From NCBI RefSeq assembly GCF_030028105.1, contig NC_092374.1, forward strand, positions 181,119,487-181,183,486: 64,000 bases of DNA, read 5' to 3'. The translations under genes and the position numbers were made by a program. Below, in pieces: positions 24,361 through 47,065 of the stretch. The first letter of the stretch is position 1; every line of letters begins with the position of its first letter. The DNA comes from Mobula birostris (Eukaryota). Below the pieces are notes generated by a model. It ran no database searches. It was not told the DNA's origin and saw nothing but the letters and a program-made list of their open reading frames with translations.

Positions 24361-24729
24361 CCATTCTATCAGACGGCTGCACGGTCAAGTACAAACTGCC
24401 TTTTTCAGTTCCCGTTGAGCAGCTAATGGATAATTCATAAATCCCGCTGTCGCTGGTCTGCAAATCTTTCATCAGTAAGGATGCATTCTCTGGAAAAAGC
24501 ACGGCCCGGTATTTATAGTGGTCGGCAATGGGAATGGTGTGGGTAAATCCAACTAAGTTGCCGTTTCTGTCCGAGGGACATCGAAAATCTACAATTCTTG
24601 TGCCGGTCTTGGTCCATGTGATCCGCAGATACCCGCCCGAGTCTGAGTTGGTGTAGGAGGCCGGTAGGAGCACAAACTGTCCGACCGTCCCTGTCAGGCG
24701 GTCCGGATGCATTCTCAGTGTTACAGCGG
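24361..24729 (-). CDS. Gene B Ig V-set exon, paralog of 5703-6077
   Basis: Acceptor gctatttttcctttag|cc, donor G|gtaggt, 369 bp, phase 1-1; TGTVGQFVLLPASY, LRITW, YKYRAVLFPENASLLMKDLQTSDSGIY; 79/119 aa identical to gene A by manual alignment. Confidence 0.9.
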
Positions 24730-26960: not shown

Positions 26961-26963
26961 AAG

Positions 26964-27056
26964 CAGATATCCCACCCTGCAAAAACTCATTTCGGGGAGG
27001 TAGCACCATCAATTTGCGGGAGACTCCCAGAACTTCCGGTAGAGGTGGGATGTCTG
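26964..27056. mobile_element. 93-bp MITE derived from the hAT at 47066-48486
   Basis: TIRs cagatatcccacc / ggtgggatgtctg; both ends match the termini of the larger element; flanks cataag/caatag. Confidence 0.8.
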
Positions 27057-27103
27057 CAATAGAGCAGCTCCTTAGCAGCTAGCCAGCTAGTTTAAATAAC
27101 GCT

Positions 27104-27799
27104 CACAACACGCTGGAGGAACTCAGCAGGTTGGGCAACATCCGTGGAAAAGATCAGTCAATGTTTCAGGCCGGAACCCTTGTCAGGACTGTAGAGGGAA
27201 GGGTGAGAGACCCTATAAAGAAGGTGAGGGGAGGGTGGGAAGGAGAAGGCTGGTAGGTTCCAGGTGAAAAACCAGTAAGGAGAAAGACAAAGGGTGGGGG
27301 AAGGGGGAAGCATGGAGGTGATAGGCAGGAAAGGTGAAGAAAGAATAGGGGAAAACACAATGGGTAGTAGAAGGAGGTGGAACCAAGAGGGAGGTGATAG
27401 GCAGCTGGGGGAGGGGGCAGAGTGAAATAGGGATAGAGGAAGGGAGGGGGAGGGAATTACTGGAAGTTGGAGAATTCTATGATCATAGCAAGGGGCTGGA
27501 GACTACCCAGATGGTGTATGAGGTGTTGTTTCTCCTACCTGAGTTTAGCCTCATCATGGCAGTAGAGGAGGCCATGTATGGACATATCTGAATAGGAGTG
27601 GGAAGCAGAGTTGAAGTGGGTGGCTACCAGGAGATCCTGTCTGTTGTGGTGGACGGAGTGGAGGTGCTCGATGAAGCGGTCCCCCAATCCGCGTTGGGTT
27701 TCACTGATGTAGAGGAGGCCACATCAGGAGCACCGGATGCAATAGATGACCCCAACAGACTCACAAGTGAAGTGTTGCCTCACCTGGAAGGACTGTTTG
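27104..27799 (-). mobile_element. Penelope-like element, GIY-YIG endonuclease region and 3' end
   Basis: Minus-strand translation QSFQVRQHFTCESVGVIYCIRCS.CGLLYISETQRGLGDRFIEHLHSV; cut at 27799 by the LTR-like insertion. Confidence 0.85.
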
Positions 27800-28070
27800 T
27801 GTCAGAAGGCGGTGGTTGGGAATGGACCCAAGTGCAAGACACAGACACTAAAGTACTAGGGACAGGACTAGGATACAGGCTGAGGGCAAGGACATGGACA
27901 GGAAAACCAGGAACCTGGAACAAGACTGGACAAGAGAGCTAGCATCCCAGTCTTGGACTCTGAGCTAAAAACTGGACAAGGACTCAGTACCTGGTCTTGC
28001 CTCTGGCTCGGACCCCAGAACTAGGCAAGGACGAGGCTTGCAGGCAGGACGAGGCTGGTGTCTTCAGGCT
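27800..28070 (-). mobile_element. LTR-like terminus of the element hosting the minisatellites
   Basis: Begins tgtcagaa (TG...CA terminus) exactly where the Penelope breaks; ggacccaagtgcaagacacagac resembles fish Gypsy-type LTR ends (from memory, not searched). The other terminus was not found. Confidence 0.5.
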
Positions 28071-28610
28071 TGAGGCTAGAGGCTAGAGACTTGGCTTGGC
28101 TTGGCAAGAGGATAGAGGATAGAGACTTGGCTTGGATGGCAAGAGGCTAGAGGCTAGAGACATGGCTTGGCAAGAGGATAGAGGATAGAGACTTGGCTTG
28201 GATGGCAAGAGGCTAGAGGCTAGAGACATGGCTTGGCAAGAGGATAGAGGCTAGAGGCTAGAGACGGCTTGGCTTGGCAAGAGGCTAGAGGCTAGAGGCT
28301 AGAGACTTGGCTTGGCTTGGCAAGAGGCTAGAGGCTAGAGGCTAGAGACTTGGCTTGGCTTGGCAAGAGGCTAGAGGCTAGAGACTTGGCTTGGCAAGAG
28401 GCTAGAGGCTTGGCTTGGCAAGAGGCTAGAGGCTTGGCTTGGCTTGGCTAGAGGCTAGAGGCTAGAGACTAGAGACTTGGCTTGGCTTGGCAAGAGGCTA
28501 GAGACTAGAGACTTGGCTTGGCTTGGCAAGAGGCTAGAGGCTAGAGACTTGGCTTGGCAAGAGGCTAGAGGCGAGGCTTGGCTTGGCTTGGCTAGGTTAG
28601 AGGCTAGAGG
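28071..28610. repeat. Minisatellite A: mosaic of (GAGGCTA)n and (CTTGG)n modules
   Basis: Repeated gaggctagaggctagagacttggcttggcttggcaa with variable module counts. Confidence 0.9.
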
Positions 28611-28808
28611 CTAGGCAGGAGGCTGGAGTCTTCAGGCTAGAGGCTAGGCAGGAGGCTGGAGTCTTCAGGCTAGAGGCTAGGCAGGAGGCTGGAGTCTTCA
28701 GGCTAGAGGCTAGGCAGGAGGCTGGAGTCTTCAGGCTAGAGGCTGGGCAGGAGGATGGAGTCTTCAGGCTTGAGGATAGGCAGGAGGCTGGAGTCTTCAG
28801 GCTAGAAG
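28611..28808. repeat. Minisatellite B: six 33-bp units (ctaggcaggaggctggagtcttcaggctagagg)
   Basis: Six units counted; gives the SSLKTPASCLA repeat on the minus strand. Confidence 0.92.
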
Positions 28809-28909
28809 GTAGGCTGGAGACTGGAGGCTGGATAGACTCCAAGCCAGAGACTGGACAAGGACCCAGTACTTGGGTCTTGCCTCTGGCTCGGACCCCAGAA
28901 CTAGGCAAG

Positions 28910-31900
28910 AGACGAGGCAAAGCAGGGCTGTGGGCAGGAGCCTTGAGGCGAAGCGAGGCGAGGCTGGGGGTAGGAGCCTTGAGGCGAGGCGAGGCGATGC
29001 TGAGGGCAGGAGCTTTGAGGTGAGGCGAGGCAAAGCAAGGCGATGCTGAGGGCAGGAGCCTGGAGACGAGGCAAGGCTGGGGGTACGAGCCTTGAGGTGA
29101 AGCGAGGCTGGGGGTACGAGCCTTGAGGCGAGGTGAGGCGAGGCTGGGGGAAGGAGCCTTGAGGCGAGGCGAGGCTGGGGGCAGGAGCCTAGAGGTGAGG
29201 CGAGGCTGAGGCTGGGGACAGGAGCCTTGAGGTGAGGCGAGGCTGAGGGCAGGAGCCTTGAGGCGAAGTGAAGCGAGGCTGTGGGCAGGAGCCTTGAGGT
29301 GAGGTGAGGTGAGGCGAAGCTGGGGGCAGGAGCCTTGAGGCGAGGCTGGGGGCAGGAGCCGTGAGGCGAGGCGAGGCTGGGGGCAGCAGACTTCAGGTGA
29401 GGCGAGGCTGGGGGCAGGAGCCGTGAGGCGAGGTGAGGCTGGGGGCAGCAGACTGCAGGTGAGGCGAGGCTGGGGGCAGGAGCTCTGAGGCGAGGTGAGG
29501 CTGGGGGCAGGAGTCTTGAGGCAAGGGGAGGCGAGGCTGAGGGCAGGAGCCTAGAGGTGAGGCGAGGCTGGGGGCAGGAGCCTTGAGGCGAGGCGAGGCT
29601 GGGGGCAGGAGCCTTGAGGCGAGGCGAGGCGACTCTGAGGGCAGGAGCCTTGAGGCGAGGTGAGGCTGGGGGCAGGAGTCTTGAGGCAAGGGGAGGCGAG
29701 GCTGAGGGCAGGAGCCTTGAGGCGAGGCGAGGCGAGGCGAAGCGAGTCTGAGGGCAGGAGCCTTGAGGCGAGGCGAGGCTGGGGGGCAGGAGCCTTGAGG
29801 CGAGGCGAGGCTGGGGGCAGAAGCCTTGAGGTGAGGGGAGGCGAGGCTGAGGACAGGAGCCTTGAGGCGAGGCTGGGGGCAGGAGCCTTGAGGCAAGGGG
29901 AGGCGAGGCTGGGGACAGGAGCCTTGAGGCGAGGCGAGGCGACTCTGAGGGCAGGAGCCTTGAGGCGAGACGAGGCGAGGCGAAGCGAGGCTGAGGACAG
30001 GAGCCTTGAGGCGAGGCGAGGCTGGGGGCAGAAGCCTTGAGGTGAGGGGAGGTGAGGCTGAGGACAGGAGCCTTGAGGCGAGGTGAGGCTGGGGGGCAGG
30101 AGCCTTGAGGCGAGGCGAGGCGAGGCTGAGGACAGGAGACTTGAGGCGAGGCGAGGCGAGGCTGAGGGCAGGAGCCTTGAGGCGAGGTGAGGCTGGGGGG
30201 CAGGAGCCTTGAGGCGAGGCGAGGCGAGGCTGAGGACAGGAGCCTTGAGGCGAGGCGAGGCGAGGCTGAGGACAGGAGACTTGAGGCGAGGCGAGGCTGG
30301 GTGCAGGAGCCTTGAGGCTAGGCGAGGCGAGGCGAGGCTGGGGGCAGGAACCTTGAGGGGAGGCGAGGCTGAGGACAGGAGCCTTGAGGCGAGGTGAGGC
30401 TGAGGGCAGGAGCTTTGAGGCGAGGTGAGGCTGAGGACAGGAGACTTGAGGTGAGGCGAGGCTGGGGGCAGGAGCTTTGAGGCGAGGTGAGGCTGAGGAC
30501 AGGAGACTTGAGGTGAGGCGAGGCTGGGGGCAGGAGCTTTGAGGCGAGGTGAGGCTGAGGACAGGAGACTTGAGGTGAGGCGAGGCTGGGGGCAGGAGCT
30601 TTGCGGCGAGGCGGGGCTGGGGGCAAAAACATTGAGGCGAGGTGAGGCGAGGCTGAGGGCAGGAGCCTTGAGGTGAGGCGAGGCTGGGGGCAGGAGCTCT
30701 GAGGCGAGGTGAGGCTGGGGGCAGGAGTCTTGAGGCAAGGGGAGGCAAGGCTGAGGGCAGGAGCCTAGAGGTGAGACGAGGCGAGGCGAAGCGAGTCTGA
30801 GGGCAGGAGCCTTGAGGCGAGACGAGGCGAGGCGAAGCGAGTCTGAGGGCAGGAGCCTTGAGGCGAGGCGAGGCTGGGGACAGGAGCCTTGAGGCGAGGC
30901 GAGGCGACTCTGAGGGCAGGAGCCTTGAGGCGAGACGAGGCGAGGCGAAGCGAGGCTGAGGACAGGAGCCTTGAGGTGAGGCGAGGCTGGGGGCAGGAGC
31001 CTTGAGGTGAGGGGAGGCGAGGCTGAGGACAGGAGCCTTGAGGCGAGGTGAGGCTGGGGGGCAGGAGCCTTGAGGCGAGGCGAGGCGAGGCTGAGGACAG
31101 GAGACTTGAGGCGAGGCGAGGCGAGGCTGAGGGCAGGAGCCTTGAGGCGAGGTGAGGCTGGGGGGCAGGAGCCTTGAGGCGAGGCGAGGCGAGGCTGAGG
31201 ACAGGAGACTTGAGGCGAGGCGAGGCTGGGTGCAGGAGCCTTGAGGCGAGGTGAGGCGAGGCTGGGGGCAGGAACCTTGAGGTGAGGCGAGGCTGGGGGC
31301 AGGAACCTTGAGGCGAGGTGAGGCGAGGCTGAGGGCAGGAGCCTTGAGGCTAGGCGAGGTGAGGCGAGGCTGGGGGCAGGAGCCTTGAGGCGAGGCGAGG
31401 CGAGGCTGAGGGCAGGAGCCTTGAGGGGAGGCGAGGCTGGGAGTAGGAGCCTTGAGGCAAGGCGAGGCGAGGCTGAGGGCAGGAGCCTAGAGGAGAGGCG
31501 AGGCTGGGTGTAGGATCCTTGAGGCGAGGCGAGGCGAGGCGAAGCGAGTCTGAGGGCAGGAGCCTTGAGGCGAGGTGAGGCGAGGCTGAGGGCAGGAGCC
31601 TTGAGGCGAGGTGAGGCGAGGCTGGGGGCAGGAGCCTTGAGGCGAGGCGAGGCGAGGCTGGGAGCAGGAGCCTGGAGGCGAGGCGAGGCTGGGGGCAGGA
31701 GCCTTGAGGCGAGGCTGGGGGCAGGAGCTCTGAGGCGAGGCGAGGCTGGGGGCAGGAGCCTTGAGGCGAGGCGAGGCTGGGGGCAGGAGCCTTGAGGCGA
31801 GGCGAGGCGACTCTGAGGGCAGGAGCCTTGAGGCGAGGTGAGGCTGGGGGCAGGAGTCTTGAGGCAAGGGGAGGCGAGGCTGAGGGCAGGAGCCTTGAGG

Positions 31901-34900
31901 CGAGGCGAGGCGAGGCGAAGCGAGTCTGAGGGCAGGAGCCTTGAGGCGAGGCGAGGCTGGGGGCAGAAGCCTTGAGGTGAGGGGAGGCGAGGCTGAGGAC
32001 AGGAGCCTTGAGGCGAGGCTGGGGGCAGGAGCTGTGAGGCGAGGCGAGGCTGGGGGCAGGAGTCTTGAGGCAAGGGGAGGCAAGGCTGAGGGCAGGAGCC
32101 TAGAGGTGAGGCGAGGCTGGGGGCAGGAGCCTTGAGGCGAGGCGAGGCTGGGGACAGGAGCCTTGAGGCGAGGCGAGGCGACTCTGAGGGCAGGAGCCTT
32201 GAGGCGAGACGAGGCGAGGCGAAGCGAGGCTGAGCACAGGAGCCTTGAGGTGAGGGGAGGCGAGGCTGAGGACAGGAGCCTTGAGGCGAGGTGAGGCTGG
32301 GGGGCAGGAGCCTTGAGGCGAGGCGAGGTGAGGCTGAGGACAGGAGACTTGAGGCGAGGCGAGGCGAGGCTGAAGGCAGGAGCCTTGAGGCGAGGCGAGG
32401 CGAGGCTGAGGACAGGAGACTTGAGGCGAGGCGAGGCTGGGTGCAGGAGCCTTGAGGCTAGGCGAGGCGAGGCGAGGCTGGGGGCAGGAACCTTGAGGGG
32501 AGGCGAGGCTGAGGACAGGAGCCTTGAGGCGAGGTGAGGCTGAGGGCAGGAGCTTTGAGGCGAGGTGAGGCTGAGGACAGGAGACTTGAGGTGAGGCGAG
32601 GCTGGGGGCAGGAGCTTTGAGGCGAGGCGGGGCTGGGGGCAAAAACATTGAGGCGAGGTGAGGCGAGGCTGGGGGCAGGAGCCTTGAGGTGAGGTGAGGC
32701 TGGGGGCAGGAGTCTTGAGGCAAGGGGAGGCGAGGCTGAGGGCAGGAGCCTAGAGGTGAGACGAGGCGAGGCGAAGCGAGTCTGAGGGCAGGAGCCTTGA
32801 GGCGAGGCGAGGCTGGGGGCAGAAGCCTTGAGGTGAGGGGAGGCGAGGCTGAGGACAGGAGCCTTGAGGCGAGGCTGGGGGCAGGAGCTGTGAGGCGAGG
32901 CGAGGCTGGGGGCAGGAGTCTTGAGGCAAGGGGAGGCAAGGCTGAGGGCAGGAGCCTAGAGGTGAGGCGAGGCTGGGGGCAGGAGTCTTGAGGCAAGGCG
33001 AGGCGAGGCTGGGGGCAGGAGCCTTGAGGCGAGGCGAGGCTGGGGACAGGAGCCTTGAGGCGAGGCGAGGCGACTCTGAGGGCAGGAGCCTTGAGGCGAG
33101 ACGAGGCGAGGCGAAGCGAGGCTGAGGACAGGAGCCTTGAGGTGAGGGGAGGCGAGGCTGAGGACAGGAGCCTTGAGGCGAGGTGAGGCTGGGGGGCAGG
33201 AGCCTTGAGGCGAGGCGAGGTGAGGCTGAGGACAGGAGACTTGAGGCGAGGCGAGGCGAGGCTGAGGGCAGGAGCCTTGAGGCGAGGCGAGGCGAGGCTG
33301 GGGCAGGAACCTTGAGGGGAGGCGAGGCTGAGGACAGGAGCCTTGAGGCGAGGTGAGGCTGAGGGCAGGAGCTTTGAGGCGAGGTGAGGCTGAGGACAGG
33401 AGACTTGAGGTGAGGCGAGGCTGGGGGCAGGAGCTTTGAGGCGAGGCGGGGCTGGGGGCAAAAACATTGAGGCGAGGTGAGGCGAGGCTGGGGGCAGGAG
33501 CCTTGAGGTGAGGCGAGGCTGAGGGTAGGAGCCTTGAGGCGAGGCGAGGCTGGGGGGCAGGAGTCTTGAGGCAAGGGGAGGCGAGGCTGAGGGCAGGAGC
33601 CTTGAGGCGAGGCGAGGCTGGGGGCAGAAGCCTTGAGGTGAGGGGAGGCGAGGCTGAGGACAGGAGCCTTGAGGCGAGGCTGGGGGCAGGAGCTGTGAGG
33701 CGAGGCGAGGCTGGGGGCAGGAGTCTTGAGGCAAGGGGAGGCAAGGCTGAGGGCAGGAGCCTAGAGGTGAGGCGAGGCTGAGGGCAGGAGCCTTGAGGTG
33801 AGGCGAGGCGACTCTGAGGGCAGGAGCCTTGAGGCGAGACGAGGCGAGGCGAAGCGAGGCTGAGGACAGGAGCCTTGAGGCGAGGCGAGGCTGGGGGCAG
33901 AAGCCTTGAGGTGAGGGGAGGCGAGGCTGAGGGTAGGAGCATTGAGGCGAGGTGAGGCGAGGCTGGGGGGCAGGAGCCTTGAGGCGAGGCGAGGCGAGGC
34001 TGAGGACAGGAGCCTTGAGGCGAGGTGAGGCTGGGGGGCAGGAGCCTTGAGGCGAGGCGAGGCTGAGGGCAGGAGCCTTGAGGGGAGGCGAGGCTGAGGG
34101 CAGGAGACTTGAGGCGAGGCGAGGCTGGGTGCAGGAGCCTTGAGGCGAGGTGAGGCTGGGGGGCAGGAGCCTTGAGGGGAGGCGAGGCTGAGGGTAGGAG
34201 CATTGAGGCGAGGTGAGGCGAGGCTGGGGTGCAGGAGCCTTGAGGTGAGGCGAGGCTGAGGGCAGGAGCCTTGAGGCGAGGCGAGGTGAGGCTGAGGGCA
34301 GGAGCCTTGAGGCAAGGCGAGGCTGGGGGCAGGAACCTTGAGGGGAGGCGAGGCTGAGGACAGGAGCCTTGAGGCGAGGTGAGGCTGAGGGCAGGAGCTT
34401 TGAGGCGAGGTGAGGCTGAGGACAGGAGACTTGAGGTGAGGCGAGGCTGGGGGCAGGAGCTTTGAGGCGAGGCGGGGCTGGGGGCAAAAACATTGAGGCG
34501 AGGTGAGGCGAGGCTGGGGGCAGGAGCCTTGAGGTGAGGCGAGGCTGGGGGCAGGAGCCTTGAGGCGAGGCGAGGCTGGGTGTAGGATCCTTGAGGCGAG
34601 GCGAGGCGAGGCGAAGCGAGTCTGAGGGCAGGAGCCTTGAGGCGAGGCGAGGCTGGGGGCAGGAGCCTTGAGGTGAGGCGAGGCGAGGCTGAGGGCAGGA
34701 GCCTTGAGGCGAGGCGAGGCAAGGCTGAGGGCAGGAGCCTTGAGGCGAGGCGAGGCGAGGCTGGGAGCAGGAGCCTGGAGGCGAGGCGAGGCTGGGGGCA
34801 GGAGGCTTGAGGCGAGGTGAGGCGAGGCTGAGGGTAGGAGCCTTGAGGCGAGGCGAGGCAAGGCTGAGGACAGGAGACATGAGGTGAGGCGAGGCTGGGG

Positions 34901-37900
34901 GCAGGAGTCTTGAGGTGAGGCGAGGCTGGGGGCAGGAGACTTGAGGTGAGGCGAGGCGAAGCTGGGGGTAGGAGCCTTGAGGCAAGGCGAGGGTGGGGGC
35001 AGAAGCCTTGAGGCGAGGTGAGGCGAGGCTGAGGGCAGGAGCCTTGAGGCGAGGTGAGGCGAGGCTGGGGGCAGGAGCCTTGAGGTGAGGCAAGGCGAGG
35101 CTGAGGACAGGAGACTTGAGGTGAGGTGAGGCGAGGCGAGACTGGGGGCAGGAGCCTTGAGGTGAGGCAAGGCGAGGGGAGGTGAGGCTGACGGCAGGGG
35201 CCTTGACGTGAGGGGAGGCGAGGCTGGGGGCAGGAGCCTTGAAGTGAGGGGAGGCGAGGCTGGGGGCAGGAGCCTTGAGGGGAGGCGAGGCGAAGCTGGA
35301 GGTAGGAGCCTTGAGGCAAGGCGAGGGTGGGGGCAGAAGCCTTGAGGCGAGGGGAGGTGAGGCTGGGGGCAGAAGCATTGAGGCGAGGGGAGGTGAGGCT
35401 GAGGACAGGAGACTTGAGGCGAGGCGAGGCGAGGCTGAGGGCAGGAGCCTTGAGGCGAGGCGAGGCGAGGCTGAGGACAGGAGACTTGAGGCGAGGCGAG
35501 GCTGGGTGCAGGAGCCTTGAGGCTAGGCGAGGCGAGGCGAGGCTGGGGGCAGGAACCTTGAGGGGAGGCGAGGCTGAGGACAGGAGCCTTGAGGCGAGGT
35601 GAGGCTGAGGGCAGGAGCTTTGAGGCGAGGTGAGGCTGAGGACAGGAGACTTGAGGTGAGGCGAGGCTGGGGGCAGGAGCTTTGAGGCGAGGCGGGGCTG
35701 GGGGCAAAAACATTGAGGCGAGGTGAGGCGAGGCTGGGGGCAGGAGCCTTGAAGCGAGGCGAGGTTGGGAAAAGGAGCCTTGAGGCAAGGCAAAGCGAGG
35801 CTGGGGGCAGGAGCCTTGAGGCTATGCGAGGTGAGGCGAGGCTGGGGGCAGGAGCCTAGAGGAGAGGCGAGGCTGGGTGTAGGATCCTTGAGGCGAGGCG
35901 AGGCGAGGCGAAGCGAGTCTGAGGGCAGGAGCCTTGAGGCGAGGTGAGGCTGAGGGCAGGAGCCTTGAGGCGAGGTGAGGCTGAGGGCAGGAGCTTTGAG
36001 GCGAGGTGAGGCTGAGGACAGGAGACTTGAGGTGAGGCGAGGCTGGGGGCAGGAGCTTTGAGGCGAGGCGGGGCTGGGGGCAAAAACATTGAGGCGAGGT
36101 GAGGCGAGGCTGGGGGCAGGAGCCTTGAAGCGAGGCGAGGTTGGGAAAAGGAGCCTTGAGGCAAGGCAAAGCGAGGCTGGGGGCAGGAGCCTTGAGGCTA
36201 TGCGAGGTGAGGCGAGGCTGGGGGCAGGAGCCTAGAGGAGAGGCGAGGCTGGGTGTAGGATCCTTGAGGCGAGGCGAGGCGAGGCGAAGCGAGTCTGAGG
36301 GCAGGAGCCTTGAGGCGAGGTGAGGCTGAGGGCAGGAGCCTTGAGGCGAGGCGAGGCTGGGAGCAGGAGCCTTGAGGCGAGGCGAGGCTGGGGGCAGGAG
36401 GCTTGAGGGGAGGTGAGGCGAGGCTGAGGGTAGGAGCCTTGAGGCGAGGCGAGGCTGGGGGGCAGGAGTCTTGAGGCAAGGGGAGGCGAGGCTGAGGGCA
36501 GGAGCCTAGAGGTGAGGCGAGGCTGGGGGGCAGGAGCCTTGAGGTGAGACGAGGCGAGGCGAAGCGAGTCTGAGGGCAGGAGCCTTGAGGCGAGGCGAGG
36601 CGAGGCTGGGGGCAGGAGCCTTGAGGCGAGGTGAGGTGAGGCTGAGGACAGGAGACTTGAGGCGAGGCGAGGCGAGGCTGAGGACAGGAGACTTGAGGCG
36701 AGGCGAGGCTGAGGGCAGGAGCCTTGAGGCAAGGCGAGGCGAGGCTGAGGACAGGAGACTTGAGGCGAGGCGAGGCTGAGGGCAGGAGCCTTGAGGCAAG
36801 GCGAGGCGAGGCTGAGGACAGGAGACTTGAGGCAAGGTGAGGCAAGGCTGAGGACAGGAGACTTGAGGCGAGGCGAGGCTGGGGGCAGGAGCCTTGAGGC
36901 AAGGCGAGGCGAGGCTGAGGACAGGAGACTTGAGGCGAGGCGAGGTTGGGAGAAGGAGCCTTGAGGCGAGGCGAGGTGAGGCTGGGAGAAGGAGCCTTGA
37001 GGCGAGGCGAGGCGAGGCTGAGGACAGGAGACTTGAGGTGAGGCGAGGCGAGGCTGAGGACAGGAGACTTGAGGTGAGGTGAGGTGAGTCTGAGGGCAGG
37101 AGCCTTGAGGCGAGGCGAGGCGAGGCTGAGGACAGGAGACTTGAGGCGAGGCGAGGCTGAGGGCAGGAGCCTTGAGGCAAGGCGAGGCGAGGCTGAGGAC
37201 AGGAGACTTGAGGCGAGGCGAGGCTGAGGGCAGGAGCCTTGAGGCAAGGCGAGGCGAGGCTGAGGACAGGAGACTTGAGGCAAGGTGAGGCGAGGCTGAG
37301 GACAGGAGACTTGAGGCGAGGCGAGGCTGAGGGCAGGAGCCTTGAGGCGAGGCGATGCTGGGAGCAGGAGCCTTGAGGCGAGGCGAGGCTGGGGGCAGGA
37401 GGCTTGAGGGGAGGTGAGGCGAGGCTGAGGGTAGGAGCCTTGAGGCGAGGCGAGGCTGGGGGGCAGGAGTCTTGAGGCAAGGGGAGGCGAGGCTGAGGGC
37501 AGGAGCCTAGAGGTGAGACGAGGCGAGGCGAAGCGAGTCTGAGGGCAGGAGCCTTGAGGCGAGGCGAGGCGAGGCTGGGGGCAGGAGCCTTGAGGCGAGG
37601 TGAGGTGAGGCTGAGGGCAGGAGCCTTGAGGTGAGGCGAGGCTGGGGGGCAGGAGCCTTGAGGTGAGACGAGGCGAGGCGAAGCGAGTCTGAGGGCAGGA
37701 GCCTTGAGGCGAGGCGAGGCGAGGCTGGGGGCAGGAGCCTTGAGGCGAGGTGAGGTGAGGCTGAGGGCAGGAGCCTTGAGGTGAGGCGAGGCTGGGGGCA
37801 GGAGCCTTGAGGTGAGGTGAGGCTGAGGGCAGGAGCCTTGAGGCGAGGCGAGGCGAGGCTGAGGACAGGAGACTTGAGGCGAGGCGAGGTGAGGCTGAGG

Positions 37901-40900
37901 GCAGGAGCCTTGAGGCAAGGCGAGGCTGGGGGCAGGAACCTTGAGGGGAGGCGAGGCTGAGGACAGGAGCCTTGAGGCGAGGCGAGGCTGAGGGCAGGAG
38001 CTTTGAGGCGAGGCGAGGCTGAGGACAGGAGACTTGAGGCGAGGCGAGGCTGGGGGCAGGAGCTTTGAGGCGAGGCGGGGCTGGGGGCAGGAGCCTTGAG
38101 GTGAGGCGAGGTGAGGCTGAGGACAGGAGACTTGCGGTGAGGTGAGGCGAGGCGAGGCTGGGGGTAGGAGCCTTGAGGCGAGGGGAGGTGAGGCTGGGGG
38201 CAGGAGCATTGAGGCGAGGTGAGGCTGAGGCTGAGGGCAGGAGCCTTGAGGCGAAGCGAGGCGAGGCTGAGGGCAGGAGCCTTGAGGCTATGCGAGGTGA
38301 GGCGAGGCTGAGGGCAGGAGCCTTGAGGCGAGGCGAGGCTGGGAGCAGGAGCCTCGAGGCGAGGCGAGGCTGGGGGCAGGAGGCTTGAGGGGAGGTGAGG
38401 CGAGGCTGAGGGTAGGAGCCTTGAGGCGAGGCGAGGCTGGGGGGCAGGAGTCTTGAGACAAGGGGAGGCGAGGCTGAGGGCAGGAGCCTTGAGGTGAGGC
38501 GAGGCTGGGGGGCAGGAGCCTTGAGGTGAGACGAGGCGAGGCGAAGCGAGTCTGAGGGCAGGAGCCTTGAGGCGAGGCGAGGCGAGGCTGGGGGCAGGAG
38601 CCTTGAGGCGAGGTGAGGTGAGCCTGAGGGCAGGAGCCTTGAGGTGAGGCGAGTCTGGGGGCAGGAGCCTTGAGGCGAGGCGAGGCTGGGGGCAGGAGCC
38701 TTGAGGTGAGGTGAGGCTGAGGGCAGGAGCCTTGAGGCGAGGCGAGGCTGAGGACAGGAGACTTGAGGCGAGGCGAGGTGAGGCTGAGGGCAGGAGCCTT
38801 GAGGCAAGGCGAGGCTGGGGGCAGGAACCTTGAGGGGAGGCGAGGCTGAGGACAGGAGCCTTGAGGCGAGGCGAGGCTGAGGGCAGGAGCTTTGAGGCGA
38901 GGCGAGGCTGAGGACAGGAGACTTGAGGCGAGGCGAGGCTGGGGGCAGGAGCTTTGAGGCGAGGCGGGGCTGGGGGCAGGAGCCCAGAGGTGAGGCGAGG
39001 CTGGGGGCAGGAGCCTTGAGGTGAGGTGAGGCGAGGTGAGGCTGAGGACAGGAGACTTGTGGTGAGGTGAGGCGAGGCGAGGCTGGGGGTAGGAGCCTTG
39101 AGGCGAGGGGAGGTGAGGCTGGGGGCAGGAGCATTGAGGCGAGGTGAGGCTGAGGCTGAGGGCAGGAGCCTTGAGGCGAAGCGAGGCGAGGCTGAGGGCA
39201 GGAGCCTTGAGGCTATGCGAGGTGAGGCGAGGCTGAGGGCAGGAGCCTTGAGGCGAGGCGAGGCGAGGCGAGGCGAGGCTGAGAGCAGGAACCTTGAGGC
39301 GAGGTGAGGCGAGGCTGAGGGCAGGAGCCTTGAGGCAAGGCGAGGCGAGGCTGAGAGCAGGAACCTTGAGGCGAGGTGAGGTGAGGCTGAGGGCAGGAAC
39401 CTTGAGGCGAGGTGAGGCGAGGCTGAGGGCAGGAGCCTTGAGGCAAGGCGAGGCGAGGCTGAGAGCAGGAACCTTGAGGCGAGGTGAGGTGAGGCTGAGG
39501 GCAGGAGCCTTGAGGCGAGGTGAGGCGAGGCTGGGGGCAGGAACCTTGAGGCGAGGTGAGGCGAGGCTGGGGGCAGGAGCCTTGAGGTGAGGCGAGGCGA
39601 GGCTGAGGACAGGAGACTTGAGGTGAGGTGAGGCGAGACGAGGCTGGGGGCAGGAGCCTTGAGGTGAGGCGAGGCGAGGCTGAGGGCAGGAGCCTTGAAG
39701 TGAGGGGAGGCGAGGCTGGGGGCAGGAGCCTTGAAGCGAGGCGAGGCGAGGCTGGGGGGCAGGATCCTTGAGGCGAGGCGAGGCGAAGCGAGTCTGAGGG
39801 CAGGAGCCTTGAGGTGAGGCGAGGCTGGGGGCAGGAGCCTTGAGGCGAGGCGAGGCGAGGCTGAGGACAGGAGACTTGAGGCGAGGGGAGGCTGAGGGCA
39901 GGAGCCTTGAGGCGAGGCTGGGGGGCAGGAGCCTTGAGGCGAGGCGAGGCGAGGCTGGGGGCAGGAGCCTTGAGGCGAGGCGAGGCGAGGCGAAGCGAGT
40001 CTGAGGGCAGGAGCCTTGAGGTGAGGCGAGGCTGAGGGCAGGAGCCTTGAGGTGAGGCGAGGCTGAGGGCAGGAGCCTTGAGGTGAGGCGAGGCTGAGGG
40101 CAGGAGCCTTGAGGTGAGGCGAGGTGAGGCTGAGGGCAGGAGCCTTGAGGCGAGGCGAGGCGAGGCTGGGAGCAGGAGCCTTGAGGCGAGGCGAGGCTGG
40201 GGGCAGGAGGCTTGAGGGGAGGTGAGACGAGGCTGAGGGTAGGAGCCTTGAGGCGAGGCTGAGGACAGGAGCCTTGAGGCAAGGGGAGGCGAGGCTGAGG
40301 GCAGGAGCTTTGAGGCGAGGCGAGGCTGGGTGCAGGAGCCTTGAGGCGAGGCGAGGTGAGGCTGAGGGCAGGAGCCTTGAGGTGAGGCGAGGCTGGGTGC
40401 AGGAGCCTTGAGGTGAGGCGAGGCTGGGGGCAGGAGCCTTGAGGTGAGGTGAGGCTGGGGGCAGGAGCCTTGAGGCGAGGCGAGGTGAGGCTGAGGGTAG
40501 GTGCCTTGAGGTGAGGCGAGGCTGGGGGCAGGAGCCTTGAGGCGAGGCGAGGCTGGGTGCAGGAGCCTTGAGGCGAGGCGAGGTGAGGCTGAGGGTAGGT
40601 GCCTTGAGGTGAGGCGAGGCTGGGTGCAGGAGCCTTGAGGCGAGATGAGGCGAGGCGAAGCGAGTCTGAGGGCAGGAGCCTTGAGGTGAGGCGAGGCTGG
40701 GGGCAGGAGCCTTGAGGCGAGACGAGGCGAGGCGAAGCGAGTCTGAGGGCAGGAGCCTTGAGGCGAGGCGAGGCTGGGGGCAGAAGCCTTGAGGCGAGGC
40801 GAGGCGAGGCTGAGGACAGGAGACTTGAGGCGAGGCGAGGTGAGGCTGAGGGCAGGAGCCTTGAGACAAGGCGAGGCGAGGCTGGGGGCAGGAGCCTTGA

Positions 40901-43900
40901 GGCGAGGCGAGGCTGAGGACAGGAGCCTTGAGGCGAGGCGAGGCTGAGGGCAGGAGCTTCGAGGGGAGGCGAGGCTGAGGACAGGAGACTTGAGGTGAGG
41001 CGAGGCTGGGTGCAGGAGCTTTGAGGCGAGGCGGGGCTGGGGGCAGGAGCCTTGAGGTGAGGCGAGGCTGAGGGCAGGAGCCTTGAGGTGAGGCGAGGCT
41101 GAGGGCAGGAGCCTTGAGGTGAGGCGAGGCTGAGGGCAGGAGCCTTGAGGCAAGGTGAAGCGAGGCTGGGGGCAGGACTCTTGAGGTGAGGTGAGGCGAG
41201 GCTGAGGGCAGGAGCCTTGAGGCAAGGCGAAGCGAGGCTGGGGGCAGGACTCTTGAGGTGAGGCGAGGCGAGGCTGGGGGCAGGAGCCTTGAGGTGAGGC
41301 GAGGCGAGGTTGGGAGAAGGAGCCTTGAGGCGAGGCGAGGCGAGGCTGAGGACAGGAGACTTGAGGTGAGGTGAGGCGAGGCGAGGCTGGGGGCAGGAGC
41401 CTTGAGGTGAGGCGAGGCGAAGCTGGGGGTAGGAGCCTTGAGGCGAGGGGAGGTGAGGCTGGGGGCAGGAGCATTGAGGCGAGGTGAGGCTGAGGCTGAG
41501 GGCAGGAGCCTTGAGGCGAGGCGAGGCGAGGCTGAGAGCAGGAACCTTGAGGCGAGGTGAGGCGAGGCTGGGGGCAGGAGCCTTGAGGCGAGGTGAGGCG
41601 AGGCTGGGGGCAGGAACCTTGAGGCGAGGTGAGGCGAGGCTGGGGGCAGAAGCCTTGAGGTGAGGCGAGGCTGGGGGCAGGAACCTTGAGGCGATGTGAG
41701 GCGAGGCTGGGGGCAGGAGCTTTGAGGCGAGGTGAGGCTGGGGGCAGGAGCCTTGAGGCAAGGCGAGGCTGGGGGCAGGAACCTTGAGGCGAGGCGAGGC
41801 TGAGGGCAGGAGCTTTGAGGCGAGGCGAGGCTGAGGACAGGAGACTTGAGGTGAGGCGAGGCTGGGTGCAGGAGCTTTGAGGCGAGGCGAGGCTGAGGAC
41901 AGGAGACTTGAGGTGAGGCGAGGCTGGGTGCAGGAGCTTTGAGGCAAGGCGAGGCTGGGGGCAGGAGCCTTGAGGTGAAGCGAGGCTGAGGGCAGGAGCC
42001 TTGAGATGAGGCGAGGTGAGGCTGGGGGCAGGAGCCTTGAGGCGAGGCTGGGCTGGGGTCAGGAGCCTTGAGGTGAAGCGAGGCTGAGGGCAGGAGCCTT
42101 GAGGCAAGGCGAAGCGAGGCTGGGGGGCAGGAGCCTTGAGGTGAGGCGAGGCGAGGCTGGGGGCAGGAGCCTTGAGGCGAGGTGAGGCGAGGCTGGGGGC
42201 AGGAGCCTTGAGGCGAGGTGAGGCGAGGCTGGGGGGGCAGGAGCCTTGAGGCTATGCGAGGTGAGGCGAGGCTGGGAGAAGGAGCCTTGAGGTTAGGCGA
42301 GGGGGGGCTGGGGGCAGGAGCCTAGAGGAGAGGCGAGGCGAGGCGAGGCTGGGGGCAGGATCCTTGAGGCGAGGCGAGGCGAAGCGAGTCTGAGGGCAGG
42401 AGCCTTGAGGCGAGGTGAGGGTGGGGGCAGGAGTCTTGAGGCGAGGCGAGGCTGAGGGCAGGAGCCTTGAGGCGAGGTGAGGCGAGGCTGAGGGTAGTAG
42501 CCTTGAGGTGAGGCTGAGGACAGGAGACATGAGGTGAGGCGAGGCTGGGGGCAGGAACCTTGAGGTGAGGCGAGGCTGAGGGCAGGAGCCTTGAGGCGAG
42601 GCGAGGCGAGGCGAGGCGAAGCGAGTCTGAGGGCAGGAGCCTTGAGGCGAGGCGAGGCTGGGGGCAGGACTCTTGAGGTGAGGTGAGGCGAGGCTGAGGG
42701 TAGGAGCCTTGAGGCGAGGCGAGGCGAGTCTGGGAGAAGGAGCCTTGAGGCGAGGCGAGGCGAGGCTGAGGACAGGAGACTTGAGGCGAGGCGAGGCTGA
42801 GGACAGGAGACTTGAGGCGAGGCGAGGCTGAGGGCAGGAGCCTTGAGGCGAGGCGAGGCTGAGGGCAGGAGCCTTGAGGCGAGGCGAGGCTGAGGGCAGG
42901 AGCCTTGAGGCGAGGCGAGGCGAGTCTGAGGGCAGGAGCCTTGAGGCGAGGCGAGGCTGGGGGCAGGACTCTTGAGGTGAGGTGAGGCGAGGCTGAGGGT
43001 AGGAGCCTTGAGGCGAGGCGAGGTGAGGCTGGGAGAAGGAGCCTTGAGGCGAGACGAGGCGAGGCTGAGGACAGGAGACTTGAGGTGAGGCGAGGCTGGG
43101 AGAAGGAGCCTTGAGGCAAGGTGAAGCGAGGCTGGGGGCAGGAGCCTTGAGGTGAGGCGAGGCGAGGCTGAGGACAGGAGACTTGAGGTGAGGTGAGGCT
43201 AGGCGAGGCTGGGGGCAGGAGCCTTGAGGCGAGGCGAGGCTGGGGGCAGGAGCCTTGAGGCGAGGCGAGGCGAGTCTGAGGGCAGGAGCCTTGAGGCGAG
43301 GCGAGGCTGGGGGCAGGACTCTTGAGGTGAGGTGAGGCGAGGCTGAGGGTAGGAGCCTTGAGGCGAGGCGAGGTGAGGCTGGGAGAAGGAGCCTTGAGGC
43401 GAGGCGAGGCTGAGGGTAGGAGCCTTGAGGCGAGGGGAGGTGAGGCTGAGGGTAGGAGCCTTGAGGCGAGGCGAGGCTGAGGGTAGGAGCCTTGAGGCGA
43501 GACGAGGCGAGGCTGAGGACAGGAGACTTGAGGCGAGGCGAGGCTGGGAGAAGGAGCCTTGAGGCAAGGTGAAGCGAGGCTGGGGGCAGGAGCCTTGAGG
43601 CGAGGCGAGGCGAGGCTGGGGGCAGGAGCCTTGAGGCGAGGCGAGGCTGGGGGCAGGAGGCTTGAGGCGAGGTGAGGCGAGGCTGAGGGTAGGAGCCTTG
43701 AGGCGAGGCGAGGCAAGGCTGAGGACAGGAGACATGAGATGAGGCGAGGCTGGGGGCAGGAGACTTGAGGTGAGGCGAGGCGAAGCTGGGGGTAGGAGCC
43801 TTGAGGCAAGGCGAGGCTGGGGGCAGAAGCCTTGAGGCGAGGGGAGGTGAGGCTGAGGGCAGGAGCCTTGAGGCGAGGGGAGGTGAGGCTGGGAGAAGGA

Positions 43901-44610
43901 GCCTTGAGGCGAGGCGAGGCTGAGGGTAGGAGCCTTGAGGCGAGGGGAGGTGAGTCTGGGGGCAGAAGCCTTGAGGCGAGGGGAGGTGAGGCTGAGGGCA
44001 GGAGCCTTGAGGCGAGGGGAGGTGAGGCTGGGGGCAGGAGCCTTGAGGCGAGGGGAGGTGAGGCTGAGGGCAGGAGCCTTGAGGCTAGGCGAGGCGAGGC
44101 GAGGCTGGGGGCAGGAGCCTTGAGGCTAGGCGAGGTGAGGCTGGGAGAAGGAGCCTTGAGGCGAGGCGAGGCGAGGCTGAGGACAGGAGACTTGAGGCGA
44201 GGCGAGGCGAGGCTGTGGACAGGAGACTTGAGGTGAGGCGAGGTTGGGAGAAGGAGCCTTGAGGCAAGGCGAAGCGAGGCTGGGGGCAGGAGCCTTGAGG
44301 TGAGGCGAGGCGAGGCTGAGGACAGGAGACTTGAGGTGAGGTGAGGTGAGGCGAGGCGAGGCGAGGCTGGGGGTAGGAGCCTTGAGGCAAGGCGAGGGTG
44401 GGGGCAGAAGCCTTGAGGCGAGGGGAGGTGAGGCTGGGGGCAGGAGCATTGAGGCGAGGTGAGGCTGAGGCTGAGGGCAGGAGCCTTGAGGCGAGGGGAG
44501 GTGAGGCTGGGGGCAGGAGCCTTGAGGCGAGGGGAGGTGAGGCTGGGGGCAGGAGCCTTGAGGCGAGGGGAGGCGAGGCTGGGGGCAGGAACCTTGAGGC
44601 GAGTGGAGGC
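28910..44610. repeat. Giant G-rich compound minisatellite, about 15.7 kb; unit (GAGG[C/T])n + TG[A/G]GG[G/A]CAGGAGCCTT, mostly 26/31/36/41 bp (+/-1)
   Basis: Continuous across the interval; roughly 500 units estimated from length divided by unit size; G- and A-rich on the + strand. Confidence 0.97.
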
Positions 44611-44621
44611 GAAAGTGGGGG

Positions 44622-44925
44622 GTGGGCAATTACCAGAAGTTCACAAAATTGATGTTTACGCCATCAGGTTGAAGGATAGCCAGACAGAATATAAGGTGTT
44701 GTCTCCAACCTGAATGTGACCTCATCGCGGCAGACAAAGAGGCCATAGACTGAAGTCAGAATGAAAAGTAGAATTAAAATGGGTGGCTACCGGGTGATCC
44801 CACTTTTTCCAGCAGATGAAGCATAGGTGCTCAGCAAAGCGGTCTCCCAATCTACGTCGGATCTCATTGATATACAGGAGGCCACATCGGGAACACCGGA
44901 CACAACAGATGACCCCAGCAGTGGG
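44622..44925 (-). mobile_element. Penelope-like GIY-YIG fragment (second, more diverged copy)
   Basis: Homologous to 27450-27750 (gggcaattaccagaag vs gggaattactggaag; aagcggtctcccaatc vs aagcggtcccccaatc). Confidence 0.75.
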
Positions 44926-44929
44926 GAGG

Positions 44930-47060
44930 GATTAATTGTCAAGAGAGTTGCGTAGGAAGAGATCCCTCCTGGTACTTATTCTTGCAAGCTGACTATAGTT
45001 TCCTGCTGAGGATGTCAAGGAATCATTTGCAGAGGGAGATACAGAGGCCCAGATTTTTGACCTCGTTCGTTGGTACTAAGGACATGATGGTGTTGAATGC
45101 TGAGCTGTAATCAATAAACAGCAGCCTGTTGTGGACATTGCTATTATCCAGATGAGCAAAGGCTGAGTGGAGAGCCAGTGAGATTCCATCTGCTGTAGAG
45201 CTATTATTGCGATAGGCAAACTTGTAGAGGGTTCAGGTCTTTTCTAAGGCAGGAGTTGATTCTGACCATAACCATCCTCTCAAGCATTTCATCATAGTAG
45301 ACATGAGTACAAGATGCGAGTCAGCAATCATTGAGGCACTCACCCTGATCTTCTTGCGTTCTGGTATGACTGTCACCCTTTTGAAAGAAGTGGGAATCTC
45401 TGACTGCAACAGTGAGAGATTAGAGATGTCTGTGAACGCTCCCACCAGTTGGTTGGCACAGGTTTTCAGAGCCCTACCAGATAAACCATCAGGGCCTGAT
45501 GCCTTGTGAGGGTTGATCCTCTTGAAAGATGTTCAGACGTCAGCCTCTGAGGCAGAGGTCACAGGGTCATCAGATGCTGCAGGGATTTGCAGAGGTGTAG
45601 TTTATCCTCCCTTTAAAGCATGCATAAAAGGCGTTGAGCTCATCTGGGAATGAAGCATCACTGCCATTCATAACATTAGGTTTTGCCTTGTATGGAGTAA
45701 TGGCCTGTAAACTCCGCCAGAGGTGCGATATATCCGATTCCGTCTCTTACCTTAATTGAAATTGTTTTATTGTCCATAAAATAGTCTTTTGTAGGTTATG
45801 CCAGGACTTCTTGTATAGTTCTGGATCACTGCTCTTGAATGCCACAGATCTAGCTCTCAGCAGATTACAAATCTCCTAGTTTATCCACTGCTTTTGGTTT
45901 CAGTATGCACACTATGTTCTCAAAGTCACACACTTATGCACACAGGTCTTGATGAAATTGGTGACAACTGTGGTGTATTAATTCACATTCAAAGATGAAT
46001 CCCTGAATGTTATCCAGTTCCACAACTTGAAACAGTTCTGTAAGTCAGGGGTCCCCAACCTTTTTTGATCTGCGGACCGGTTTCATATTGACAATATTCT
46101 TGCGGACCGGCCGACCGGAGGGGGGTGTGGTAGGGTTGCCAACGGACAAGAGTAGCAGTCAAATACATTGTGTTTACCCCGAGAAAGACTACCATGACCA
46201 TATTAAATGATATTATCATTTAAAGAAAAATTGGATAGGTATATGGACAGGAAAGGAATGGAGGGTTATGGGCTGCATGCAGGTCGGTGGGACTAGGTGA
46301 GAGTAGCATTCAGCACGGACCAGAAGGGCAAAGGTAGCCTGTTTCCATGCTGTAGTTGTTATATGATTATATAAGTCAATAGCATCATAACATTTTAAGT
46401 AACATTTGGATATTAAACACACAGCGCATATTTTCCCCGTATGAACATATAAAATCATTACAACGCACCAATATCGCTGAATCAGTGGGAGCCCTGGGCT
46501 GAATACTTGATCCCCTGCAACAAGATGGTCCCATCGAGGGGTGGTGGGAGACAGCGATACTCAAAAGGGGTTCCTTATTCTATTCCGCAATTTAGTTTTC
46601 GTTGTATTCATTGCAGAAATATGTTGGAAATAGAAGCAACATTTTCAGTGCTTTCATGTCTATCTCAGGATATTTAGCCTTGACTTTGATCCAGAATGCC
46701 GGCAGAGCTGTTATGTCAAACATACTTTTCAGCCCACAGTCATTTGCAAGCTCAAGGAGTTGATCTCCTTCCCACGTGGGTAACGAGCTCACGTGTGTTC
46801 AAGCTCAACAGTGGGCGTGACAAGGAATGAGGAAAGATGCAGCTGACTCATATCGCCAAATCATATCGTTTCCTCATGGCCCAGTAGCACATGCTTTGCG
46901 GCCCGGTGCCAGTCCGCGGCCCGGTGGTTGGGGACCGCTGCTGTAAGTGCTCCTTTCCTCCCTTGACCACAACTTCTTAGACCTCACTACTGGCGCCGTG
47001 GTGTTTTGTCTCTGCCTCTACGCTGAGAGCAGAAATACAACCAGGAGATCAGATGTTCCC
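44930..47060 (-). mobile_element. Rex1/Babar-like LINE RT fragment, interrupted by hAT-Charlie
   Basis: FTDISNLSLLQSEIPTSFKRVTVIP...TMMKC resembles Rex1 RT; sequence resumes after the 8-bp TSD at 46941. Confidence 0.7.
46046..46940 (-). mobile_element. hAT-Charlie-type non-autonomous DNA transposon with transposase C-terminal remnant; CR1 3' end inserted at about 46220-46365
   Basis: TIRs caggggtccccaacc / ggttggggaccgctg; perfect 8-bp TSD ctgtaagt (46038-46045, 46941-46948); QLLELANDCGLKSMFDITALPAFWIKVKAKYPEI resembles the hAT dimerization domain. Confidence 0.9.
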
Positions 47061-47065
47061 AAGTG

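What the first reader, a model, noticed from the sequence alone, without database searches (positions are those of the whole stretch)
28910..44610. 15.7-kb G-rich modular minisatellite about 3 kb upstream of the receptor pair
Seen: an uninterrupted array of roughly 500 units following a two-module grammar, (GAGGC)1-6 plus TG[A/G]GG[G/A]CAGGAGCCTT, so unit lengths step by 5 bp. It contains no TE insertions, although the flanks are saturated with them. Inference: a young or still-expanding array, much larger than typical minisatellites, that could act as a methylated block, a fragile site or a copy-number and recombination driver beside an immune-receptor cluster.
Basis: partly seen in the sequence, partly recalled or inferred. 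Interest (0 to 1): 0.7.

Follow-up and report, generated by a model that had tools for sequence, protein, structure and literature searches.

The report
Large GC-rich minisatellite beside ray receptor genes
A real 15.7-kb run of about 455 short G-rich repeat units lies upstream of an immune-type receptor gene in a ray genome, but it looks like an ordinary, very large, methylation-decayed minisatellite with no sign of a special function.

Summary
An uninterrupted tandem array lies at 28926-44612 and has about 455 units. Each unit is 2-7 GAGGC-type pentamers plus a 16-nt core, so unit lengths step by 5 bp (31 and 36 bp make up 80%).

It is the large half of a compound domain. A 0.75-kb sister array (28072-28826) is homologous to it, and each array follows a copy of the same 84-bp leader.

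The array is not young:
- There are 198 unit types.
- Units differ from consensus by about 6%.
- About a quarter of CpG sites have decayed, at about 7 times the non-CpG transition rate, which points to germline methylation.
- A second species whose orthologous flank is about 2.5% diverged holds some of its 31-mers.

It is still turning over: multi-unit blocks are duplicated at 96-100% identity.

I found:
- no coding periodicity;
- no Rfam family;
- no excess hairpin potential;
- no canonical G-quadruplex motif;
- few AGCT sites;
- no array words in three small, probably RNA, runs.

Its right edge lies 17 bp after the stop codon of a truncated Penelope-like retroelement. The unit does not significantly match that element's 3' UTR, so seeding by the element remains only a positional rival.

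I could not test array length by spanning reads or genome-wide abundance. Earlier notes of this scan report other 12-kb and >55-kb arrays of different sequence in this genome. Verdict: new member of a known kind, low interest.

The parts
28926..44612 (+). Main array A2: about 455 units of (GAGGC-type pentamer)x2-7 plus a 16-nt core TG[A/G]GG[G/A]CAGGAGCCTT. G-rich on the + strand, C-rich in the sense of the neighbouring receptor gene.
   Evidence: TRF; anchor counts and spacings; unit parse; composition.
28072..28826 (+). Sister array A1. A1a (28072-28600) has 36/43-bp units with nested GGCTAGA and CTTGG sub-repeats. A1b (28601-28826) has a 33-bp unit homologous to the A2 unit.
   Evidence: TRF. 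The A2 unit profile hits A1b at E about 1e-6, while nothing else in the window beats E=17.
27956..28037 (+). Leader L: 84-bp segment directly preceding array A1.
   Evidence: BLASTN shows 89% identity to 28835-28918.
28835..28918 (+). Leader L': second copy of the same segment, directly preceding the main array. Together they imply a duplicated leader-plus-array module.
   Evidence: BLASTN; sequence read directly.
35591..36342 (+). Perfect 10-unit (376-bp) tandem block duplication inside the array, the clearest sign of recent multi-unit exchange.
   Evidence: Unit-type run analysis; ungapped diagonal scan gives 490 bp at 97.6%.
44633..44931 (-). 5'-truncated Penelope-like element fragment (GIY-YIG endonuclease end of the ORF, with a stop and a frameshift). 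Its stop codon at 44630-44632 lies 17 bp from the last array base.
   Evidence: Translation. Atlas top clusters are GIY-YIG at 0.94. A word-search hit carries PF01541. Pfam itself was blank.
26990..27801 (-). Second Penelope-like fragment in the same orientation: endonuclease part 27460-27801 and its + strand G-rich 3' UTR 26990-27459. Its truncated 5' end lies about 150 bp left of leader L, at the left side of the repeat domain.
   Evidence: Translation; 80.6% identity to the right-hand fragment; alignment with a third UTR copy at about 62997-63300.
24338..24712 (-). V-set immunoglobulin exon of the nearest receptor gene. The array lies 5' of this gene.
   Evidence: Pfam V-set E=9.8e-9; 64% identical to the V-set exon at 5599-6105.

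Best explanation
This is a genuine intergenic, GC-rich, strand-asymmetric minisatellite (VNTR type) of about 455 units. It is the expanded half of a duplicated 'leader plus short array' module.

Each unit nests a pentanucleotide microsatellite (GAGGC)n inside a 16-nt core. Replication slippage in the pentamer tract created length classes 5 bp apart (inferred). Unequal exchange or gene conversion of multi-unit blocks then spread particular unit types and enlarged the array; the duplicated blocks and the length classes carrying their own variant signatures are shown.

Its CpGs decay like methylated CpGs. Continuing turnover has kept it free of TE insertions (inferred).

It most likely has no sequence-specific function. 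It is a passive, large tandem-repeat block of a kind reported as common in ray genomes. At most it acts as a bulky, methylated spacer 3-4 kb upstream of a receptor gene.
For: Array anatomy and significance.

Sister array and duplicated leader.

Unit diversity: 198 unit types in 447 parsed units, only 1.8% of adjacent units identical, no regular higher-order period.

Internal turnover: blocks of 200-490 bp at 96-100% identity, at offsets of roughly 0.06-11 kb, mostly under 5 kb.

Length classes tied to variant signatures: 19 of 24 46-bp units share a GAAGC pentamer in fifth position followed by GAGTC or GAGGC.

CpG decay: C to T is 20.7% in CpG context against 1.2% in CpT context, and G to A is 5.1% against 0%. 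Among 54 private single changes, 16 are CpG transitions, about 7 times the non-CpG transition rate. CpG o/e is 0.62 against 0.34 in the flanks.

Not coding: most unit lengths are not multiples of 3, and the long minus-strand ORFs exist only because the C-rich strand lacks stop triplets.

No RNA family. No excess folding. No canonical G4, AGCT at 2.4 per kb, and AID hotspot density below the flanks.

Three small runs flagged as probably RNA hold about none of its words.

Length looks real: 5867 distinct 31-mers, 55% of them single, and no perfect repeat longer than about 0.5 kb, which argues against an assembler loop.

Tandem-repeat-dominated regions, and higher GC in highly repetitive regions, are reported for a stingray genome (preprint 10.1101/2025.06.08.657570).
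Against: No spanning reads were available, so the 15.7-kb length is not independently confirmed. Runs of the same species hold only 35-40% of the sampled words. That may reflect contig simplification, but it could also mean allele differences.

Genome-wide abundance of the unit is unknown.

The array's right edge sits exactly where a retroelement's 3' UTR should be. A purely local-origin model treats that as coincidence.

Absence of function is inferred from absence of signals, not shown. CpG o/e of 0.62 with 68% GC formally meets CpG-island criteria.
Confidence: 0.72

Rival explanations
1. TE-seeded satellite. The whole repeat domain (27830-44612) would be the hugely expanded 3' UTR of the right-hand Penelope-like copy in a partial tandem of two same-orientation copies, seeded by the G-rich, internally repetitive UTR of that element.
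For: The array ends 17 bp after the element's stop codon, and the first 25 nt or so after the stop align with the UTR start of the other copy. The canonical UTR of about 460 bp seen in two other copies is missing here. A second truncated copy in the same orientation lies close to the other end of the domain. Penelope-like terminal sequences are known to give rise to tandem arrays, and these elements form partial tandems (bioRxiv 10.64898/2026.07.22.740005; PMC8557442). An earlier unchecked note reports a LINE-seeded satellite in this genome.
Against: The unit does not match the UTR better than shuffled controls (116/500 and 240/500 shuffles score as well). The unit profile scores the UTR at E=63. 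The leader and spacer show no residual similarity to the UTR. No hammerhead ribozyme was detected in the flanks scanned (26800-29000, 62900-63450) at a permissive threshold, or anywhere in the window at gathering score. The two UTR copies available are from elements only about 80% identical to the right-hand one, so the test is weak. These elements also prefer to insert at simple repeats, which would explain the adjacency the other way round.
Confidence: 0.15
2. Functional non-B-DNA or recombination element. The G-rich array would form R-loops or G-quadruplexes and act as a switch-region-like recombination substrate, fragile site or chromatin boundary for the paired receptor genes.
For: GC skew is +0.52 over 15.7 kb. 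It is built on pentamers, like mammalian switch repeats. There is about one two-tetrad G-run motif per unit. 275 units contain 8 of the 10 bases of the human hypervariable minisatellite core (core as listed in PMC2408603 and PMC9069542). It lies next to immune-type receptor genes.
Against: There is no canonical G4 motif, and mean G4Hunter is 0.88, below the usual 1.2. AGCT is only 2.4 per kb, and WRC/GYW density is lower than in the flanks. Hairpin potential equals that of shuffles. The array is C-rich in the receptor gene's sense and lies outside its exons seen here. The probable RNA runs hold none of its words. CpG decay indicates a methylated state.
Confidence: 0.07
3. Assembly artefact. 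The array exists, but its length or order is inflated or scrambled by the assembler.
For: Long tandem arrays are hard to assemble. No spanning read could be examined. Same-species contig sets hold only 35-40% of the sampled array words.
Against: The sequence is not a loop of identical blocks: the longest perfect multi-unit repeat is 376 bp, 55% of distinct 31-mers are unique within the array, and variant order is non-periodic. The right flank (from 44862 on) is reproduced without differences by contigs of a same-species run, though no listed contig spans the array junction. 15.7 kb is within the length of a high-fidelity long read (my own knowledge).
Confidence: 0.08

Closest known systems
GC-rich hypervariable minisatellites of the Jeffreys type (for example human CEB1, MS32, HRAS1 VNTR)
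   Same: Unit of tens of bp, head-to-tail array, high GC with purine/pyrimidine strand asymmetry, interspersed variant units, and growth by block exchange. Most units contain GGGCAGGA, the first 8 bases of the published 10-nt human core.
   Different: It is at the upper end of size (about 455 units, 15.7 kb). It has a nested pentamer tract that gives quantised unit lengths. Only 6 units match the full 10-nt core. Allelic length variation and meiotic instability are untested. The host is a ray, not a mammal.
Mammalian immunoglobulin class-switch regions
   Same: Kilobase-scale, pentamer-based, strongly G-rich on one strand, and near immune genes.
   Different: It is not in a J-C intron of an antibody heavy-chain gene. 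It is C-rich in the sense of the adjacent gene. AGCT is sparse (2.4 per kb), and AID hotspot density is below the flanks.
Satellites born from retroelement ends (Penelope-derived non-LTR retrozymes; the LINE-derived satellite noted earlier in this genome)
   Same: The array directly abuts a truncated Penelope-like element, 17 bp after its stop codon, in the position of its 3' UTR.
   Different: The unit has no significant similarity to the element's UTR copies available here. It has no hammerhead motif, and at 31-36 bp it is far shorter than retrozyme units.
Tandem-repeat-dominated regions reported in elasmobranch genomes
   Same: A multi-kb block made almost wholly of simple tandem repeat, in a batoid genome (preprint 10.1101/2025.06.08.657570).
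   Different: That report is a genome-wide statistic for other species. No sequence comparison with this unit was possible.

Membership tests
Minisatellite / VNTR | Head-to-tail tandem array of units of about 10-100 bp | tested here: met
   Units of 26-51 bp, about 455 copies; 413 anchor matches against 0.08 expected.
Minisatellite / VNTR | Interspersed variant repeats along the array | tested here: met
   198 unit types among 447 parsed units; only 1.8% of adjacent units identical.
Minisatellite / VNTR | Length polymorphism between alleles and individuals | not testable with these tools
   Only short-contig data sets were available, and the reads tool does not take long repeats.
Jeffreys-core hypervariable minisatellites | Unit contains the core GGGCAGGANG (16-nt form GGAGGTGGGCAGGARG) | tested here: not met
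   275 units have GGGCAGGA, but only 6 have the full 10-mer. The best 16-mer matches have 3-4 mismatches. Core sequences taken from PMC2408603 and PMC9069542.
Immunoglobulin switch region | Lies in the intron upstream of constant exons and is G-rich on the non-template strand of that gene | tested here: not met
   It is intergenic, 5' of a minus-strand V-set receptor gene, and C-rich in that gene's sense.
Immunoglobulin switch region | Dense AGCT / WGCW hotspots | tested here: not met
   AGCT 2.4 per kb; WRC+GYW 86 per kb against 111 per kb in the flanks.
TE-derived satellite (Penelope-like / retrozyme) | Repeat unit homologous to a segment of the parent element | tested here: not met
   Local alignment is no better than shuffles; profile E=63 on the UTR. 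The test is weak because only UTRs from copies about 80% identical were available.
TE-derived satellite (Penelope-like / retrozyme) | Hammerhead ribozyme in each unit | tested here: not met
   No Rfam hammerhead match at gathering score anywhere in the window, and none at a permissive threshold in the flanks scanned; the 31-36-bp unit is probably too short to hold one (my judgement).
TE-derived satellite (Penelope-like / retrozyme) | Array physically continuous with the parent-type element | tested here: met
   The array ends 17 bp after the stop codon of a GIY-YIG retroelement fragment.
Abundant genome-wide satellite | Many long arrays of the same unit elsewhere in the genome | not testable with these tools
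   There is no other copy in this 64-kb window, and no access to the rest of the genome. Summed contig depth is explicitly not a copy number.
Coding tandem repeat | Unit length a multiple of 3 with one frame conserved | tested here: not met
   Only the 36- and 51-bp classes are multiples of 3; units of 26, 31, 41 and 46 bp (230 of 447) shift the frame. The word search with one array ORF gave nothing.

The most novel reading that the evidence does not exclude
The compound array occupies roughly the 3'-UTR slot between two Penelope-like copies in the same orientation. It could therefore have been born from that element's UTR. It could even have been seeded by reiterative copying of a short template by the element's telomerase-related reverse transcriptase, and later enlarged by recombination.
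Probability: 0.07. Interest if true: 0.55.

Novelty: new member of a known kind. Interest (0 to 1): 0.25.

Why it matters
As it stands it matters little. It is a well-resolved example of how a nested pentamer tract quantises minisatellite unit length, and of block-wise growth with CpG decay.

It would be useful as a hypervariable marker, and as a caution for assembly and annotation beside ray immune-receptor genes.

It would matter more if long reads showed large allelic length differences tied to receptor copy number or expression, or if a genome-wide survey showed that this unit regularly sits at the 3' end of one retroelement subfamily.

Tried and rejected
1. Coding repeat: rejected. The long minus-strand ORFs (up to 1219 aa) are stop-free by composition, unit lengths break the frame, and a word search with one ORF gave no scored hit.

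2. Structured RNA: rejected. No Rfam hit at gathering score, and only chance hits at E up to 10.

3. Regular higher-order repeat: none. Unit-distance autocorrelation is flat, and 31/36 alternation is near random. TRF's period 67 is simply 31+36.

4. Edge-to-centre divergence gradient: none, 4.6-7.9% per kb throughout.

5. Strand asymmetry of CpG decay as an R-loop footprint: 20.7% against 5.1% overall, but only 11 against 5 among private mutations. That is not significant and is explained by spread of GAGGT-bearing units.

6. Unit derived from the retroelement UTR: not significant.

7. Fetching other copies of the retroelement subfamily through protein searches: only 3 distant hits, so no flanks to inspect. 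Pfam was blank on the short endonuclease pieces.

8. My own BLASTN self-comparison returned nothing usable, so I replaced it with a diagonal scan. A first fuzzy-regex parse undercounted units, so I replaced it with a Hamming scan.

I laid the right junction and flank instead. All runs were contigs, so neither spanning nor copy number could be read.
Full report
**Observation.**
- TRF reports one array at 28926-44612, with period 36, 455 copies and 76% matches. It also reports period 67, which is 31+36.
- The 14-nt anchor CAGGAGCCTTGAGG with up to 1 mismatch occurs 413 times, against 0.08 expected from shuffles. Every listed match is on the + strand and inside the array.
- With up to 3 mismatches I find 448 anchors. 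Their spacings are 26, 31, 36, 41, 46 and 51 bp (8, 177, 180, 21, 24 and 2 times).
- 92% of spacings fall in the 5-bp series. Most of the rest are +1 bp from a G5 to G6 run, and seven are double units whose middle core is degenerate.
- This gives about 455 units.
- No gap between anchors exceeds 67 bp, so nothing interrupts the array.
- GC is 0.68 and GC skew +0.52 across the whole 15.7 kb. The flanks have about 0.42 and about 0.

**Anatomy of the units.**
- Of 1530 parsed pentamers, 70% are GAGGC and 14% are GAGGT. GAGGG, GAAGC and AAGGC are 2-3% each.
- The core has 52 variants.
- Length classes are tied to variant signatures. For example, 19 of the 24 46-bp units share a GAAGC pentamer in fifth position followed by GAGTC or GAGGC. 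Most length variation was therefore inherited by copying unit types and did not arise by repeated new slippage.
- There are 198 unit types among 447 parsed units, and adjacent units are identical only 1.8% of the time.
- There is no regular higher-order period and no divergence gradient along the array.
- Multi-unit blocks of 200-490 bp recur at 96-100% identity, mostly at offsets under 5 kb (range about 0.06-11 kb). One is a perfect 10-unit (376-bp) tandem duplication at 35591/35967.
- This is the pattern expected from pentamer slippage plus unequal exchange or conversion of blocks.

**Age and methylation.**
- C to T at the last pentamer base is 20.7% when the next base is G, against 1.2% when it is T.
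- G to A at the first base is 5.1% after C, against 0% after T.
- Among 54 private single changes, polarised by unit frequency, 16 are CpG transitions. That is about 7 times the per-site rate of non-CpG transitions.
- CpG o/e is 0.62, against 0.34 in the flanks.
- I infer germline methylation and an array that is neither fresh nor at equilibrium.
- The + strand excess of CpG decay is not significant among private changes (11 against 5). It reflects the spread of GAGGT-bearing units.

**Wider structure.**
- The main array is half of a compound domain.
- An 84-bp leader occurs twice at 89% identity (27956-28037 and 28835-28918). Each copy is followed on the + strand by an array.
- The first array, A1 (28072-28826), has 33-43-bp units with their own nested 5- and 7-mers.
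- Its 33-bp part matches the profile of the main unit at E about 1e-6. Nothing else in the window beats E=17.
- A leader-plus-array module was therefore duplicated, and one copy then expanded about twenty-fold.

**Gene context.**
- Two V-set exons, 64% identical, lie on the minus strand at 5599-6105 and 24338-24712.
- The repeat domain therefore lies 3.4 kb (main array 4.2 kb) 5' of the nearer receptor gene, and is C-rich in that gene's sense.
I did not verify the species.
- To the right I found only TE remnants: a LINE reverse-transcriptase piece, an integrase, and very high-copy elements.

**Retroelement adjacency.**
- Both sides of the domain adjoin minus-strand fragments of a Penelope-like element.
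- The fragments translate to a GIY-YIG endonuclease-type C-terminus.
- Pfam was blank on these short pieces. The protein atlas puts the right-hand piece in GIY-YIG clusters at 0.94, and one of three word-search hits carries PF01541.
- The right-hand fragment's stop codon is at 44630-44632, 17 bp from the last array base. The canonical 3' UTR seen in two other copies (26990-27459 and about 62997-63300) is missing there.
- Position therefore suggests the array may have grown out of that UTR.
- Sequence does not support this. Unit against UTR is no better than shuffles, the profile scores E=63 on the UTR, and the leader and spacer show no residual similarity.
- No hammerhead is called anywhere.
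- The literature shows that Penelope-like ends can seed tandem arrays. It also shows that these elements insert preferentially at simple repeats. Adjacency can therefore be read either way, and I keep TE seeding as a 0.15 rival.

**Tests of a function.**
- Coding is excluded by unit lengths.
- DNA folding of four 140-nt samples gives z-scores between -0.3 and +0.8.
- There is no canonical three-tetrad G4 motif, and mean G4Hunter is 0.88.
- AGCT is 2.4 per kb, and WRC/GYW density is below the flanks.
- The resemblance to switch regions therefore stops at G-richness and pentamers.
- 275 units contain GGGCAGGA, 8 of the 10 bases of the published human hypervariable core. Only 6 match the full 10-mer.

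**Public reads.**
- Four runs of the same species hold 35-40% of 445 sampled array 31-mers.
- Four runs of a second species hold 6%.
- Three small runs flagged as probably RNA hold none.
- About 8% of array positions carry words that recur 20 or more times. The second species' share therefore fits shared consensus-type words.
- I laid contigs on the right junction and flank (44500-50400). Single-copy contigs of the same species match without differences at depth of about 55.
- Contigs of the second species match the same flank with about 2.5% differences. It is therefore a close relative with an orthologous flank.
- The repeat family thus probably predates the split of the two species.
- All runs were contigs, so array length and copy number could not be read. 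I did not send the array itself to the reads tool, because its stated rule turns long repeats away.

**Comparison and verdict.**
- The thing meets the defining features of a GC-rich minisatellite that I could test. It fails those of a switch region, a retrozyme or a coding repeat.
- Large tandem-repeat blocks are reported as common in a stingray genome. Earlier unchecked notes of this scan list other 12-kb and >55-kb arrays of different sequence in this same genome.
- I classify it as a new member of a known kind, with low interest.
- What remains open is its true length in reads, its allelic variability, its genome-wide distribution, and whether the retroelement adjacency is causal.

Noticed in passing
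window 28072-28826: The sister array has its own nested short repeats (GGCTAGA 7-mers and CTTGG 5-mers inside 36/43-bp units, then a 33-bp unit). Nested slippage is therefore a property of the locus, not only of the big array.
   Followed up: partly
window about 62997-63300 (+) and 27100-27190 (-): The 3' UTR copies of the Penelope-like element carry CTGATGA ... GAAAC in hammerhead-like order (intact in the 63-kb copy, degenerate in the left one). Rfam calls no hammerhead even at E up to 10.
   Followed up: partly
window 46076-47060, 48243-48636, 49425-49818: Summed contig depth is 10^4-fold above the single-copy level in both species, which indicates very high-copy short interspersed elements. 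48637-49424 and 50016-50400 look single-copy.
   Followed up: no
window 25353-25415: A perfect (GT)31 microsatellite lies between the receptor V-set exon and the repeat domain, in the likely promoter-proximal region.
   Followed up: no
window 5599-6105 and 24338-24712 (minus strand): The two V-set exons are 64% identical at protein level, which fits a tandem paralogue pair. No further receptor exon was seen right of the array.
   Followed up: partly
window 45236-45532 (-), 52645-53883 (-), 8299-8925 and 10874-11485 (+): A LINE-type reverse-transcriptase piece directly abuts the truncated Penelope-like fragment. An integrase ORF with rve, SH3 and p58 C-terminal domains and further RVT_1 fragments show the flanks are a TE mosaic.
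   Followed up: partly
window 27877-27888: A 12-nt exact match to the array core (AGGCTGAGGGCA) lies left of the first leader in a purine-rich stretch. It may be a relic unit, but it is not significant on its own (profile E=18).
   Followed up: partly
window 49078-49439: Contigs of the related species align here with a 28-bp gap and about 2% substitutions, a small indel difference in the orthologous flank.
   Followed up: no
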